Source of the DNA: Haliotis cracherodii
Lineage: Eukaryota
Direction: 5' to 3'
DNA: 64,000 nucleotides
Assembly (NCBI RefSeq): GCF_022045235.1
Contig: NW_027266292.1
Coordinates: 124,001 to 188,000 of the forward strand
The notes under the pieces are model-generated. The model made no database searches. It was not told the DNA's origin and saw nothing but the letters and a program-made list of their open reading frames with translations. Below, one piece after another: positions 11,771 to 63,538 of the stretch. The position numbers and the translations under genes were made by a program. Positions within the stretch are counted from its first letter, which is position 1. Every line of letters starts with the position of its first letter.

Positions 11771-12482
11771 TGTATAGAAGTATATAGGTCCGTGAGTATA
11801 TAAATATGTTCATTTGGACGCATTTAAGCAAATCAGCCCAAATCAGATTTCACAATTCGCTGTGCAGATGTTTCGAAACTGATTCGCACTGATTACGTGC
11901 CTTGGTTTGTTACAACCATACCCGTGCTCGTGTCTTTCACGAAAGTGGTTTATGTCTAACATCTGGCTTTCCCACACTTATATAACACGATATATAACCG
12001 AAATACTGTGCATTAAACAATATTCACTCAGCTTACCATATCATGCCTATCATTAATAGGAAAGGATTTATATTATAATTATTTGGTTTTACATAATATT
12101 GTGTCAATATAATATAAATAATTTAACATAATCTAAGCTTTTAAAATATTCAACGGGGGAACACAAGGAATGGGTCACAGACACTGTACTTATGTTGAAA
12201 ATCGAACCAAGGTTTTAGGCGCAACAGGCTAACACCTTACCTACCAGGCCATACCTCCCCCAGTTTAAATGCAAATACAATCTTCCAACAGTTTACATAG
12301 AGACAAGGCAATAAAACGATATTATATTTAAAGCTTTTATTGTAATCCCGTTATAGGATTTATCACAGTTGTCAATGGCAGCACTCATGTGGTACCAGGG
12401 TTCAGAGATTTGATGATACGATGATAAGAATACATATGTATCTAGATGTTCATCACAAAAACAAGTCCATTTATGAAACAAA

Positions 12483-13887
12483 TCACCACGGCCTCCATGG
12501 AACCTGTTGCTCCGTCTTGATTTGTTGAGAGTAGGACCACGTGCTCTGGAGCCACGCCCTCACTCTCGAGTCATCAAAGTTTTTGTGGATTCTGCTCGAC
12601 TCCATTTTACAAAGTTCTGAATCTGAGAGATTGGATGAGTGATAGTGTCCGGTTCTGGGGGTGGATTGTTTGATAATGTCAGGAGAACCAGCATATCCAC
12701 TGTCTGAAAAACTGTTGTCCTCCGTCACGGGGGAAGTGCACACTGTACTGCTCATGTACGCATGCTCAGCCGGATGTGGATATTGGGAATTGCGGGAAGG
12801 CACTGCGCTCAGTCTCTCATAGCATTGACTTGTGTATGACGTCACATCATCTGTTGATGACGTCACGGGTACCTGTTCAATGTGCGTCATACGTCGGGAT
12901 ATGTGTTTTCTAAGCTGATGGTGTACATTGTCCGACACTCCTGGCAAAGACTGAATGTAGGATAGGACTTCTTCAGCACATTTGGAGAAGCCATGCTGGA
13001 ATCTAGCTTGAACTGCTTCTTTGACGTGTTGATGTGTGGTGTTGATCTTCCTGACGTTCCTCAGATAATCTACAGTCGTCTCCAGAATCTCGGCCTTCTC
13101 CATCTTGTCATAATTTGGGTCCTGTAAAATCGGAAGAAGAAGAATATAAATACATGTTATATATTGTGTAGAGGAGAGATAGCACTTGCGTATCGGTGGA
13201 TATTATTGTGTTTGTTTTGTTTGTTGCTAACTCAGCAATATTCCAGCTTTTTGATGGCGAGTCTGGACCAGACAGTCCAGTGATTGACATCATGAGAATC
13301 GATCCTCGCAACTGGGATCCCGTTAGTCGCCTCTGACGACAAGCATAGTCACTTTTACTTTTACGAAAGCATGGGTTGCTGAATACCTATTCTACCCCGG
13401 ATCTTCACGGGTGTATATGATTGTGAAAAAGTCTGTCCCAGATCACTGAAATGTGACAATACTTACATTTTGTTGTTGCTCTCGACACACGATGTCTTTG
13501 ATTTCTGACAGACTCTGGTTGATTCTGGCTCGTCGCCGTTTTTCAGCCATTAATTTTCGCCCCTGTAAGATAAAGAGATTAATTAATAACAAAATATTTG
13601 TATATGAAATACGGCTGGAAGATGTGCCCTAATTCCATGAAGATAAAAATGTTTCTCAGTAAAGAAGATCGGATTTTTCCCATTTCACCCGAATAGTGCA
13701 TTAGCCACGTGTTTCAAGTAGAATCATACAACAGTTTCAAGGCAAATAATATGACAATGACGACACATTTATTCCCATCAAATTAGTCACGTCCATTTGA
13801 GAATTATTATTTGAGTAATCTAATGCATACCTTTCTTCGGCCCATATATTCACTGTCAGATTCCATGTTATGAAAGTAAGATTCCAT
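12483..13887 (-). CDS. hes: HES-like bHLH-Orange-WRPW repressor, copy 2 (263 aa)
   Basis: complement(join(12483..13121,13467..13562,13831..13887)); exon 2 GRKLMAEKRRRARINQSLSEIKDIVCREQQQN (96 bp); Orange domain ARFQHGFSKCAEEVLSYI; ends WRPW-TGA. Confidence 0.95.
13208..13412 (-). mobile_element. Family B short retroelement in intron 2 of HES copy 2
   Basis: Deleted copy lying within intron 13122-13466. Confidence 0.8.
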
Positions 13888-14220
13888 CACTGCGATGTGT
13901 TCAGCTCTGAGGGACAAGTTAGTGTGATGGAACGCCGCCTCCCGACCCGCCTTTATACCCCCAACATTCCCCTACCCACGCTAATCTATGCACATTTATG
14001 TGTTGACATCTGAATAGCCCGGCGCGATCCGATACATCCAGCCAATCAGCGCACGCTTAGCTAAGTGGTGGCACGCGCCAGCTCGCGTTAAACATCACCC
14101 CGAGACAGATGTTCTTCTCACGACCCGACAGGGATGATATTCTTCAGGTGCAAGGAGCATCTTGCTTGGCGTGACACGAGGAGTTACGAGGACGAGCACC
14201 CGGCCTGTCAACAATCCGCC
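13888..14220 (-). promoter_or_regulatory. 5' UTR and proximal promoter of HES copy 2
   Basis: TATA 13952-13957, CCAAT, class-C site 14070-14079, Su(H) site 14115-14122, N-box. Confidence 0.85.
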
Positions 14221-14504
14221 TCATTATAATCTTGTGTTTCATTCAATGGAATAATATTTCCACCTATTTTGGAGCATGACACGCGCTGTGTCGCATTCCG
14301 TCGCCTACCGTTACCTGGACCAGTAACCAGGTGAAACACCACGGACGGCGTAAATACATATATATAGCTGTGTTAACTGAATAACGTCTTCTAATATACA
14401 AATCCTTCTTATGATTACACAAAGCGTTTGAAAATCATACCACGTAATTGTTAACAACATGAATAATATATAACTAGACGAAATGAAAACATATCGTATA
14501 AAAT

Positions 14505-14667
14505 GAGTGAGTGAGTATGTTTTATTCCGCTTTTAGCTATATTCCAGAAATATCACGACAGGGGACACCAGAAATGGGCTTCACATATTGAACCCATGTG
14601 GGGAATCGAACCTAGGTCTTCGGCGTAACGAGCGAACGCTTTAACCACAAGGCTACCCGACGGCCCC
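14505..14667 (-). mobile_element. tRNA-derived SINE, family A
   Basis: 14-bp TSD ATATCGTATAAAAT (14491-14504 and 14668-14681). Confidence 0.9.
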
Positions 14668-61157: not shown

Positions 61158-61400
61158 TACCTGTGTGTACCTCAAGTCTGATTAGTCTGTGAAAGCCCAC
61201 ATGGGTGTGGTTCTGACGAAACCCACAGAGTTGGTGGTAAAAAAATACTTCGAAAAGTTGTTTGTATCTCAGAAAAAGGTATCACCTAATCCAATATAGA
61301 CCGGCATCCATTACCGTCGGGTGACTGAGCCCAGTGCCTAAAGAATACATCAGTGTCACTATCAGATAGAAATTTATACCGATGTGTTGCATTCCAAAAC

Positions 61401-61740
61401 ACAATACCCCGGCAAACATTCCTCCACTCTCACTGTCATTAAACCCCGTCGATGATGTTGTGACACGCAGGAACAATGACAGTGACGGATGGCGGGCTCG
61501 AGGTGTCAAGTCGACATGCGCCATCGACGTCCACTGTTATTCGATATATCCACTCAGCCACGAACTTTAACAACCGCCATTAGCTCAGAGTCAGAGCGCC
61601 CCTGTCTATATCAAAATGTCTCCCGTTATCTCGCCCGTGTGCTATCGTCACGCGCTGCTGGTGTCACGTGATAACCGGGCACCTGCACTGATTTAGTGTC
61701 ACGTGAGCCCATTAGGGGAAGTCCCCCGGGGAATCCCCGA
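61401..61740. promoter_or_regulatory. Conserved non-coding element E+A, spacer 7-8
   Basis: E block nearly identical to 8366-8500; A block at 61647-61705; two kB-like sites at 61715-61738. Confidence 0.6.
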
Positions 61741-62826
61741 CACTGGCAGTTGGAGATAATGTTTATCACAAGGATGCCAGTGGACTAGATGAACTTTAAT
61801 TGTCCTATTAATTCAGAGACGCTGTAAAATGCAAAGGTTCATTTAAAAGACATTAGGAGACACGTTTTATAACCTGTAGCGTAGTTATCGCTGTTATCTG
61901 TTGGAGGCCCCAGGACATGTATTTAATAAAATAGATCGCACCCAACCCATCCTCATCAACTTCGCAGCTCCAGCAGCCCATACTCATACCCAGCTTCAAG
62001 GATTTAAATAACTAAGAGACTTGAGAGTTCCTTCCACTTGAAAATTGATTTGACCAAAAAGATACAAACATTATCAAACGTTACCAGGGTGAAACCAGTC
62101 ATCGAAACACTGCGAACTTCCAAAACACAACTATGATACCCGTATCAAATACATCAGCATCAAATAACAATTTCTTGTAGTTTAATCTTTAGCCACCATC
62201 AAACATGGTTGGGTGTTTTCTTTTGTACGGCAGTTTAGCACTATGCACATGTTTTATCTATTCAACTTTATGCACAACTTAAATTTGGGAACTACATGTT
62301 AATCTATTGCCTGAAGTAGTGTCATATCCAAGTTCAGACATTTGATGAAAAAGCCAATTCCCAGTCCCAAACAGCTTGCTCTAAGGTTCCGTCATGGCAT
62401 TCAGTTATAAACCAGATGAATTGAGTAACAAAAGAAGCTTTACCCCACATCTGAGATTTTATAATATGTTTGAAATGCTTTTATTTTTAAAATAAAATAT
62501 GATTTCAAATTTTATTTTTTCCTTATAACACACAACTGCCAATGAGTATCTTGTTATTGAGAATCAATTCGGCACAAATTTACAAGATTTTAACATTCTT
62601 TACCCCCGACTTTATTGAACCAATCTATTTTTACATAAAAAAATACCAATCCACAAATGACCTTTTTTGCAAACTGTTGCAGAAGTGAGAGATGGTTAAA
62701 TAGTCAATAAATCAAATTTAGCAACAATTTCAGTTACATCATACAAACTCGGTATGGCCTTCAGTTTACCTACGTCCAGTGCTACAGTGCTACACACGTC
62801 TACGTCGAGACAGGTGAAAGGAATGA

Positions 62827-63092
62827 GTGAGTTGGGCTTATCGCCGCTTTTAACAGTATTCCAGTTATTTCACGGCGTTTCAGCTTAATGTGGGAGGAAA
62901 GCCCGAAGTGATGCAGACGTTTACCACTTCGATGAAACCCACGGTCACGGGTATGGTGCTGACAAACCTAGAAACATAAACGGGGCGAACCGGGATTCGA
63001 ACCCACAATCATAGGTTTCTGGCGTGCCCAAGGGACGCAACTTTGCACAGCGAATCGCGGCGCCTTAGACGACTGGGCCACCCGTGCCCCCC
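62827..63092 (-). mobile_element. tRNA-derived SINE, family D
   Basis: Head TGGCCCAGTCGTCTAAGGCG...GGTTCGAATCCC; same 3' tail as family A; 12-bp TSD TGAAAGGAATGA (62815-62826 and 63093-63104). Confidence 0.8.
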
Positions 63093-63538
63093 TGAAAGGA
63101 ATGATCTTATGGACTTTGAATAATAATATTTCTTCTAAATGCGATAAACTTCAACCAGACAATCATACGCTTTCCCCTTCGGTGCCATCTCTGGCAGTGA
63201 AAACAGAACAATGGAATTTGATAACTGATATCACATCTCAAAACAAACACAGCGCGAGGTAGTACGTGGCAATTATTACACACCCTGGAATATTATCTAA
63301 AAACATACACCTACAAAATAAATGGAACCCAGAGCTGACTCAATCTCGACTTTATTCTAAACTTTAGTTGGAATCCTTTTTAGCGTATTCTCCGGGGTCT
63401 AACAGACCTACTGCCTCATTCTGCGTGTAAGGCTTCGACACAATATAGATTGAGAACAAAGGCGAAGAATTTGTTGGTCAGATTTATTCATGTATCACAG
63501 ATAAAAAATGATGGACTATTCAGATTCAGCAACAATCA

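What the first reader, a model, noticed from the sequence alone, without database searches (positions are those of the whole stretch)
12329..63500. K-boxes (miR-2 family sites) retained in otherwise unalignable 3' UTRs
Seen: the full K-box CTGTGATA (TATCACAG on the + strand) lies 30-120 nt after the stop in copy 2 (12361-12368), 4 (27760-27767), 5 (35345-35352), 6 (43600-43607), 7 (53055-53062) and 8 (63493-63500). Extra TGTGAT cores occur at 12452-12457 and 27821-27826. Copy 3 has a one-base change at the homologous spot (TACCACAG near 20058). Copy 2 also has a Brd box AGCTTTA (12329-12335). The UTRs of copies 2, 7 and 8 share little else by eye. Known: K and Brd boxes mediate miR-2/11/13 and miR-4/79 repression of Drosophila E(spl)/Brd genes, and miR-2 is a protostome family. 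Inference: miR-2 control of HES genes is ancient or convergent outside arthropods, and copy 3 may have escaped it.
Basis: partly seen in the sequence, partly recalled or inferred. Interest (0 to 1): 0.75.

Follow-up and report, generated by a model that had tools for sequence, protein, structure and literature searches.

The report
miR-2 sites kept in abalone HES genes
Eight neighbouring abalone HES genes have almost all kept one eight-letter docking site for the microRNA miR-2 in tails that otherwise no longer resemble each other, which suggests a mollusc uses a control first described for the related fly E(spl) genes.

Summary
The window holds a minus-strand tandem array of bHLH-Orange-WRPW (HES) genes of an abalone. 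One copy is 100% identical to an NCBI Haliotis cracherodii protein.

Copy 1, whose tail lies just outside the window, has it too at +47. That makes 7 of 8 copies.

Exons and promoters are 78-97% identical. Introns and 3' tails do not align between lineages, so recent duplication does not explain the shared 8-mer. In an unbiased count CTGTGATA is the top 8-mer, found in 5 of 6 lineage groups against 3 for the next best. No 8-mer reached 5 groups in 3000 shuffles.

The genome encodes a miR-71/miR-2 cluster whose arms begin TATCACAG, so the motif is a perfect 8mer site. In every intact copy no AATAAA or ATTAAA precedes the site. Spliced-looking contigs of a close relative cover copy 2's tail through the site's position.

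Selection on a miR-2 site is the best reading. It is not proven: there is no repression test, and I could not read orthologous tails. The Brd box is not supported. Ancient origin versus convergence stays open. I found no paper describing this.

The parts
12361..12368 (-). Copy 2 K box CTGTGATA, a perfect 8mer site for the miR-2 family, +115 after the stop
   Evidence: A 179-nt contig of run X1 lies on 12336-12512, across this place.
27760..27767 (-). Copy 4 K box, +85 after the stop
35345..35352 (-). Copy 5 K box, +76 after the stop
43600..43607 (-). Copy 6 K box, +76 after the stop
53055..53062 (-). Copy 7 K box, +29 after the stop
63493..63500 (-). Copy 8 K box, +39 after the stop
20058..20065 (-). 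Copy 3 degenerate site CTGTGGTA (+114). It sits at the place homologous to the sites of copies 4-6. The change would leave a G:U pair at seed position 3.
20130..20135 (-). Copy 3 AATAAA at +44. This is the only canonical poly(A) signal lying between a stop and the site in any copy.
27821..27827 (-). Copy 4 second site CTGTGAT (7mer-m8) at +25
12452..12457 (-). Copy 2 extra TGTGAT 6-mer at +26. Contigs of two runs leave out one letter at 12457, so it is probably not conserved.
12336..12341 (-). Copy 2 AATAAA, 20 nt after the K box. The RNA-like contig of X1 ends here.
53020..53025 (-). Copy 7 AATAAA, 30 nt after the K box
63483..63488 (-). Copy 8 AATAAA, 5 nt after the K box
12329..12335 (-). 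Copy 2 AGCTTTA (Brd-box 7-mer). It is a single occurrence abutting the AATAAA, and I judge it not supported as a functional site.
12483..13121 (-). Copy 2 last coding exon (helix 2, Orange, WRPW, stop)
20179..20820 (-). Copy 3 last coding exon
27852..28481 (-). Copy 4 last coding exon
35428..36057 (-). Copy 5 last coding exon
43683..44312 (-). Copy 6 last coding exon
53091..53729 (-). Copy 7 last coding exon. Its product is 100% identical to P0001.
63539..64000 (-). Copy 8 last coding exon, cut by the window end (it runs to 64165)
1..526 (-). Copy 1 last coding exon, 5' part. Its stop and tail lie left of the window. Its K box is at L005 1387-1394 (+47) and its AATAAA at +71.

Best explanation
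The CTGTGATA 8-mers are working target sites for the abalone's miR-2-family microRNAs. Purifying selection has kept them in the short 3' UTRs of a tandem array of HES repressor genes.

Shown:
- The motif is the exact 8mer complement of the arms encoded in the genome's miR-71/miR-2 cluster (pairing to microRNA positions 2-8, plus an A opposite position 1).
- It is the only long word shared across tails that otherwise do not align.
- It lies upstream of the first canonical poly(A) signal in every intact copy.

Inferred: miR-2-loaded Argonaute binds the site about 20-60 nt before the poly(A) tail and brings about deadenylation and translational repression. This would limit the level or lifetime of HES mRNAs, much as K boxes do for Drosophila E(spl) transcripts.

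Copy 3 has a seed mutation and an earlier AATAAA, and has probably left this control.
For: 1. Seven of 8 copies have the 8-mer 29-115 nt after the stop.

2. Unbiased count over the first 150 nt of the 8 tails. CTGTGATA is the top 8-mer, in 5 of 6 lineage groups, and the next best reach 3. In 3000 dinucleotide shuffles no 8-mer reached 5 groups; the null counts were 2256 at 2 groups, 739 at 3 and 5 at 4. The motif itself appeared in more than 2 groups in 0 of 20000 shuffles. Of 1680 same-composition 8-mers it alone reaches 5 groups, and the next reaches 2.

3. The sharing is not recent common descent. Exon 3 is 87-97% identical and the 300 nt upstream of the ATG 78-96%. Introns, tails and downstream DNA of different lineages score like shuffles. 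Local blastn finds only 9-16 nt matches centred on the 8-mer.

4. The exons look homogenised. dS is 0.09-0.16 among copies 2, 3, 7 and 8 despite their unalignable introns. Copy 3's exon groups with copies 2 and 8, while its intron 1 and tail group with copies 4-6. I read this as gene conversion.

5. The copy-1 type is old. It has its own C-terminal signature in H. rufescens, H. rubra and H. asinina proteins and forms a clade with them, support 92/58.

6. Conservation stops exactly at the 8 letters; the three flanking letters on each side vary.

7. The genome has mir-71 plus four mir-2 hairpins above Rfam's cut-off. Six arms in that locus begin TATCACAG.

8. No AATAAA or ATTAAA lies between stop and site in the 7 intact copies. 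An AATAAA follows the site by 5-30 nt in copies 1, 2, 7 and 8, and GATAAA follows by 14 nt in copies 4-6.

9. Contigs of runs X1 and X2 have depth on copy 2's last exon and tail, and X2 also on its upstream exons. Both have no depth at 12100-12299. One X1 contig lies on 12336-12512. Another stops fitting exactly at the exon-3 boundary (13121) with 37 further letters, as a spliced RNA would.

10. Two of 8 unlinked WRPW genes carry the 8-mer (+459, followed by ATTAAA; and +207). A third has two TGTGATA. Eight of 1680 same-composition words do as well.
Against: - There is no test of repression. There is also no evidence that miR-2 and these HES mRNAs meet in the same cells.
- The kind of runs X1 and X2 is only guessed as RNA. 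They come from a coded organism whose contig differs from the window by 8 letters and 1 gap in 177. The difference table was cut (299 rows not shown), so I could not read whether the 8 letters are intact there.
- Copies 4-6 have no canonical poly(A) signal within about 250 nt of the site, so their 3' ends are uncertain.
- Five of 8 unlinked WRPW genes have neither the 8-mer nor the TGTGATA 7-mer.
- The other E(spl) motifs are missing: Brd box in 1 of 8 tails, GY box in 0 of 8.
- The age of most paralogue lineages is blurred by concerted evolution. In the tree 11 of 22 inner branches are unresolved.
- My lineage grouping was chosen by me. Merging copy 3 with copies 4-6 gives 5 of 5 groups.
Confidence: 0.7

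Rival explanations
1. The 8-mer is under selection, but for a factor other than miR-2. It could be an RNA-binding protein site, or an upstream element of the poly(A) signal it always precedes.
For: The motif sits at a fairly constant 5-30 nt before a poly(A) hexamer. In copies 3-6 and in the unlinked gene L029 it is followed after exactly 10 nt by GTTGAT, which hints at a larger composite element. No microRNA dependence was tested.
Against: Conservation covers exactly the 8 letters of a canonical 8mer site, including the first C and last A, and nothing beside them. Of 65,536 possible 8-mers, the one that an unbiased count puts on top is the complement of a microRNA family encoded in six arms in this genome. 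From memory, I know of no RNA-binding protein motif with just these 8 letters; Pumilio-type sites are UGUA-based.
Confidence: 0.13
2. There is no selection. The 8-mer is a neutral leftover of the ancestral tail in young duplicates, or was spread by gene conversion from the neighbouring exon, or is chance.
For: The copies are tandem duplicates with low dS (0.09-0.16 among copies 2, 3, 7, 8). Gene conversion clearly acts on the exons. Within copies 4-6 the site is simply part of an alignable tail.
Against: The DNA between the stop and the site differs in length (29-115 nt) and does not align between lineages, so a conversion tract running out of the exon cannot have carried the site. Introns lying between converted exons are also unalignable, so the noncoding DNA is old. 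Chance is excluded. Copy 1, whose type is shared with three other species, keeps the site.
Confidence: 0.07
3. The sites are real miR-2 sites, but each lineage or the abalone array gained them independently. In that case the likeness to Drosophila K boxes is convergence and not an inherited protostome circuit.
For: Offsets and flanks differ between lineages. Brd and GY boxes are absent. The array expanded within the abalone lineage, or at least is homogenised there. Only 2-3 of 8 other HES genes have sites. Short seed sites arise easily.
Against: Sites also occur in distant HES paralogues on other contigs. One of these shares the spacing to GTTGAT with copies 3-6. This reading is compatible with the best explanation and concerns only its age.
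Confidence: 0.45

Closest known systems
[quoted passage not shown] Source: Lai, Burks and Posakony 1998, Lai 2002, and Lai, Tam and Rubin 2005, seen only as citations and one summarising passage in PMC4575448 and PMC4238352. The papers themselves were not read.
   Same: The 8-letter motif is the same. The microRNA seed family is the same. The targets are again a tandem array of bHLH-Orange-WRPW repressor genes with short 3' UTRs, and several members of the array carry the site.
   Different: The host is a mollusc, not an arthropod. There are no Brd or GY boxes and no Bearded-type genes were seen. There is mostly one site per tail. Orthology to E(spl) genes is not shown (the NCBI names are automatic). 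No functional test exists.
miR-9 control of vertebrate Hes1/her genes
   Same: A conserved microRNA acts on a HES-family 3' UTR to limit an unstable repressor mRNA.
   Different: The microRNA family and the site are different, and in vertebrates the effect has been demonstrated experimentally.
Protostome miR-71/miR-2 cluster and its predicted targets (Marco et al. 2012, PMC3384581; abstract and passages read).
   Same: The same clustered family with near-identical mature arms is present here.
   Different: That paper predicts neural-development targets in fly and worm. The words Notch, Enhancer of split and K-box do not occur in its main text.

Membership tests
Canonical microRNA 8mer seed site (miR-2 family) | Watson-Crick match to microRNA positions 2-8, plus A opposite position 1 | tested here: met
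   The reverse complement of CTGTGATA is TATCACAG, which is the first 8 letters of six arms in locus L011.
Canonical microRNA 8mer seed site (miR-2 family) | The cognate microRNA gene is present in the same genome | tested here: met
   Four mir-2 hairpins score 53.7-71.4 bits against a cut-off of 45.5, and mir-71 scores 59.6 bits, at G000:C2:13.77 Mb.
Canonical microRNA 8mer seed site (miR-2 family) | The site lies inside the mature mRNA's 3' UTR | tested here: inconclusive
   No AATAAA or ATTAAA lies between stop and site in 7 of 7 intact copies, and an AATAAA follows in 4 of them. RNA-like contigs span copy 2's site position in one run. However, the run's kind is a guess, only one copy was laid, and copies 4-6 lack a canonical signal.
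Canonical microRNA 8mer seed site (miR-2 family) | Preferential conservation relative to the flanking UTR | tested here: met
   comparing paralogues only. Orthologues could not be read.
Canonical microRNA 8mer seed site (miR-2 family) | microRNA-dependent repression and co-expression | not testable with these tools
   This needs reporters, AGO-CLIP and small-RNA data from embryos or larvae.
Drosophila-type E(spl) 3' UTR motif module | K boxes in several members of a tandem bHLH-Orange-WRPW array | tested here: met
   Seven of 8 copies. Pfam HLH and Orange domains are precomputed for P0001, which is 100% identical to copy 7. All copies end in WRPW.
Drosophila-type E(spl) 3' UTR motif module | Co-occurring Brd boxes (AGCTTTA) and GY boxes (GTCTTCC) | tested here: not met
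   Brd box in 1 of 8 tails and GY box in 0 of 8, within 400 nt. A miR-79-like arm containing TAAAGCT does exist in the genome.
Drosophila-type E(spl) 3' UTR motif module | Bearded-family genes interspersed in the complex | not tested
   No dedicated search was made. The other ORFs of at least 100 aa in the window were not compared with any database.
Drosophila-type E(spl) 3' UTR motif module | Notch/Su(H) responsiveness of the genes | tested here: inconclusive
   One YGTGRGAA match at about -235 in 5 of 8 promoters, with no paired-site arrangement. This is a motif match only.
Drosophila-type E(spl) 3' UTR motif module | Orthology of the genes to arthropod E(spl) bHLH genes | not tested
   Only Haliotis relatives were retrieved. 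Published work calls mollusc HES relationships poorly resolved (PMC5381572, passages).

The most novel reading that the evidence does not exclude
miR-2 (K box) control of E(spl)-like HES genes is an inherited protostome circuit, older than the split of molluscs and arthropods. That would make it one of the few microRNA-target pairs conserved across phyla. It is kept in abalone through repeated duplication, exon homogenisation and complete turnover of the surrounding UTR. The shared CTGTGATA-N10-GTTGAT arrangement in an unlinked HES paralogue would be a relic of that ancestral UTR element.
Probability: 0.25. Interest if true: 0.85.

Novelty: new member of a known kind. Interest (0 to 1): 0.64.

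Why it matters
K boxes were found in Drosophila E(spl) genes before microRNAs were known to explain them, and they remain a textbook case of microRNA control of Notch targets. In the literature I could search, they are described only for arthropods.

A mollusc HES array that keeps the same 8mer site through complete turnover of its UTRs has two uses. It gives a clean natural experiment for selection on a single seed site. It also makes the question 'ancestral protostome circuit or convergence' directly testable, by comparing HES tails across spiralians and by reporter assays. For mollusc developmental biology it predicts that miR-2 shapes HES output in embryos and larvae.

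Tried and rejected
Cross-species conservation.
- I laid contigs of four coded runs on window 10500-16499. A DNA-like run (X15) and an RNA-like run (X1) cover copy 2's tail.
- The table of differing letters was cut (299 rows not shown), so the state of the 8 letters in those organisms could not be read.

Metagenome scan.
- It returned 13 loci with distant HES genes (29-67% identity over the matched part) from unidentified animals. 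Ten of them show a WRPW-type end.
- None of the 10 has CTGTGATA in up to 600 nt downstream. Two of those tails are shorter than 150 nt, and most loci are one gene from related sources.
- The taxa are unknown and may lack miR-2, so I count this neither for nor against an ancient origin.

Brd box. It is rejected as a supported feature, although a miR-79-like arm exists in the genome.

Su(H) sites. Only a single candidate site was found in 5 of 8 promoters, too weak to call the genes Notch targets.

Duplex folding of the miR-2 arm with each site. It showed seed pairing with varied 3' pairing (-12.5 to -16.4 kcal/mol). I ran no shuffle control, so I draw nothing from it.

Literature.
- Six searches were answered, and I read passages of eight papers.
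- They gave no report of K boxes or miR-2 sites in mollusc or other spiralian HES genes.
- The Platynereis Hes paper (PMC4172395) and the 2026 Platynereis Notch paper (PMC13172424) show zero occurrences of 'K box' and 'miR-2' in the listing.
- Subscription journals and supplementary files were not searched and could hold such a report.

The search of earlier findings by words found nothing.

Full report
WHAT IS THERE

The window is G000:C29:124001-188000 of a 1.18-Gb assembly. It holds a tandem array of eight genes on the minus strand, each ending in WRPW-stop.
- The last exon of copy 7 is 100% identical to a 262-aa NCBI protein of Haliotis cracherodii with precomputed Pfam HLH and Hairy_orange domains.
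- All other strong hits are from H. rufescens, H. rubra and H. asinina. So this is an abalone HES array.
- Each gene has three coding exons over about 1.5 kb. Copy 8 has the first two exons fused.
- Copy 1's last exon runs off the left end of the window and copy 8's off the right end. I fetched both flanks.
- The genome search found only these eight copies of this type, plus ten other Orange-domain genes elsewhere.

THE OBSERVATION

- TATCACAG occurs 10 times, always on the + strand. Both strands together were expected to give 2.73, and 0 of 100 shuffles reached 10.
On the gene strand they read CTGTGATA at +115, +85, +76, +76, +29 and +39 after the stops of copies 2, 4, 5, 6, 7 and 8.
- Copy 3 has CTGTGGTA at 20058-20065.
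The tally is therefore 7 of 8.
- Three of the four remaining hits belong to one intergenic repeat, and one lies in copy 7's upstream region.
- The 6-mer ATCACA alone is not enriched: 67 found against 65.95 expected.
- The assembly gap at 47170-47321 is intergenic, inside a repeated spacer element whose two sides are in the expected order. It does not bear on the finding.

IS THE SHARING JUST RECENT DUPLICATION?

No.
- Exon 3 is 87-97% identical between copies, and the 300 nt upstream of the ATG 78-96%. Introns 1 and 2, the first 150 nt of the tail and the next 300 nt score like shuffled sequence between lineages.
- Only copies 4, 5 and 6 align throughout. Copy 3 shares a 42-55 nt block around the site with them.
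- Between copies 1, 2, 7 and 8 and all others, local blastn finds nothing but 9-16 nt matches, most of them centred on the 8-mer.
- Synonymous divergence is 0.09-0.16 among copies 2, 3, 7 and 8, and 0.2-0.42 for most other pairs. That is far too low for unalignable introns.
- Copy 3's exon groups with copies 2 and 8, while its intron 1 and tail group with copies 4-6. I infer that exons and promoters have been homogenised by gene conversion while the noncoding DNA is old.
- The copy-1 type has a distinctive C-terminal extension that is also present in H. rufescens, H. rubra and H. asinina proteins. It forms a clade with them, support 92/58. At least this lineage therefore predates the split of those species.
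- The rest of the tree is poorly resolved, with 11 of 22 inner branches open. That is what concerted evolution would produce.

IS IT MORE THAN CHANCE?

- Counting every 8-mer in the first 150 nt of the eight tails, CTGTGATA ranks first: 7 tails and 5 of 6 lineage groups. The next best words are T-rich or low-complexity and reach 3 groups. The poly(A) hexamer is the only other widely shared word.
- In 3000 dinucleotide-preserving shuffles, no 8-mer reached 5 groups. The motif itself appeared in more than 2 groups in 0 of 20000 shuffles.
- Of the 1680 distinct permutations of its letters, it alone reaches 5 groups, and the runner-up reaches 2.
- Conservation ends exactly at the eight letters.

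WHAT IT MATCHES

- The genome encodes mir-71 followed by four mir-2 hairpins above Rfam's threshold at C2:13.77 Mb. Six arms in that locus begin TATCACAG.
- CTGTGATA is therefore a canonical 8mer site for this family.
- An unbiased top 8-mer landing on the complement of an encoded microRNA seed, and on the very family tied to E(spl) genes in flies, is what the microRNA reading predicts. Other readings do not predict it.

IS THE SITE IN THE mRNA?

- In the seven intact copies, no AATAAA or ATTAAA lies between stop and site.
- An AATAAA follows the site by 17, 20, 30 and 5 nt in copies 1, 2, 7 and 8. Copies 4-6 have only GATAAA, 14 nt after the site.
- I laid contigs of four coded runs on 10500-16499.
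  - X1 has depth only over copy 2's last exon and tail. X2 covers these and also the bins that hold the two upstream exons. Both also pile up on repeats, and both have zero depth at 12100-12299.
  - One X1 contig lies on 12336-12512, across the site position, and ends at the AATAAA.
  - Another X1 contig stops fitting exactly at the exon-3 boundary (13121) with 37 more letters, as a spliced transcript would.
  - This supports a transcript that includes the site. But the run's kind is only guessed, and the organism differs from the window by about 4-5% in the tail. The difference table was truncated, so I could not confirm the eight letters there.

BEYOND THE ARRAY

- Of eight unlinked WRPW genes, two carry the full 8-mer within 500 nt of the stop: L023 at +459, with ATTAAA at +505, and L029 at +207. 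A third, L026, has two TGTGATA. Only 8 of 1680 same-composition words occur in two or more of these tails.
- L029 shares the arrangement CTGTGATA, 10 nt, GTTGAT with copies 3-6. I did not follow this up.
- Thirteen distant HES loci from metagenomes, of unknown animals, have no K box in the 10 that show a WRPW-type end. I treat this as uninformative.

COPY 3

- Its A-to-G change would leave a G:U pair at seed position 3.
- It is the only copy with an AATAAA (+44) upstream of the site, inside a segment that copies 4-6 lack.
- Its coding sequence looks constrained: against copy 8, dN is 0.019 and dS 0.087.
- A shortened UTR followed by decay of the site is a reasonable reading, but it is untested.

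BRD BOX

AGCTTTA occurs in 1 of 8 tails. By my own arithmetic from base composition about 0.1 is expected. It directly abuts copy 2's AATAAA, and the X1 contig ends just before it. A miR-79-like arm exists in the genome, but the site is not supported. No GY box is present.

COMPARISON WITH WHAT IS KNOWN

- K, Brd and GY boxes as microRNA sites repressing Drosophila E(spl)-C transcripts are summarised in PMC4575448 (passage) and PMC4238352 (passages). The primary papers of Lai and colleagues were seen only as references.
- The abalone case shares the motif, the seed family, the target gene family and the tandem arrangement.
- It lacks the other two motif classes. No Bearded genes were sought. 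Orthology to E(spl) genes is untested.
- It works like a K box. I do not file it as a member of the fly module.
- Searches for K box or miR-2 together with HES, E(spl), mollusc, spiralian, annelid, oyster, snail or abalone found no description of this (passages). Subscription journals and supplements were not covered.

VERDICT

- Selection on a miR-2-family 8mer site is the best explanation (0.7).
- Function is inferred, not shown.
- The age of the link (ancestral against convergent) is open.
- The earlier notes on this window concern other features and did not affect this reading.

Noticed in passing
window 13888-14187, 21551-21850, 29155-29454, 36739-37038, 44963-45262, 54582-54881 (the 300 nt upstream of each ATG): The 300 nt upstream of the ATG is 78-96% identical between all eight copies. 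That is more than synonymous sites of the same genes, while the introns do not align. TATAAA sits at about -70 in all 8 copies. A Su(H)-type CGTGAGAA match sits at about -235 in 5 of 8. Either the promoter is strongly constrained or exons and promoter are homogenised by gene conversion.
   Followed up: partly
L021 / G000:C29, window-equivalent 64347-64493: Copy 8 has coding exons 1 and 2 fused, so intron 1 is absent. Proteins from the H. rufescens contig (P0003) and from H. asinina (P0008) share its N-terminal variant, so the intron loss may be old.
   Followed up: no
L005 1441-2112 (copy 1 last exon; partly window 1-526): Copy 1 ends in a different, longer C-terminus before WRPW. This ending is conserved in H. 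rufescens, H. rubra and H. asinina proteins.
   Followed up: partly
window 5718-5780, 31474-31536, 38711-38773: An intergenic repeat family carries TATCACAG next to TGACGTCA-like (CRE-like) words. It accounts for 3 of the 4 non-UTR hits of the motif.
   Followed up: no
L029 (G000:C16, about 2.478 Mb) and window copies 3-6: An unlinked, distant HES paralogue has CTGTGATA followed after exactly 10 nt by GTTGAT, the same arrangement as in copies 3-6. This may be a composite UTR element, a relic of common ancestry, or coincidence.
   Followed up: no
L011 (G000:C2:13772686-13775750): The miR-71/miR-2 cluster has six arms beginning TATCACAG. Four are above Rfam's mir-2 cut-off and two are more diverged.
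   Followed up: partly
L054 1501-1576 (G000:C1:80384882-80384957): A near-palindromic hairpin scores above the mir-9 cut-off on both strands (70.1 and 69.5 bits) and carries TAAAGCT on both strands. It may be a microRNA locus read in both directions.
   Followed up: no
window 11500-11900, 13100-13500, 14500-14700, 16100-16500: These stretches drew very high summed contig depth in all four runs laid, with many joints between them. They are abundant repeats, and one lies inside copy 2's intron 2.
   Followed up: no
L042-L051 (metagenome contigs): HES genes of unidentified animals end in WRPW followed by a conserved 9-residue extension and then the stop. No K box lies within 600 nt downstream.
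   Followed up: no
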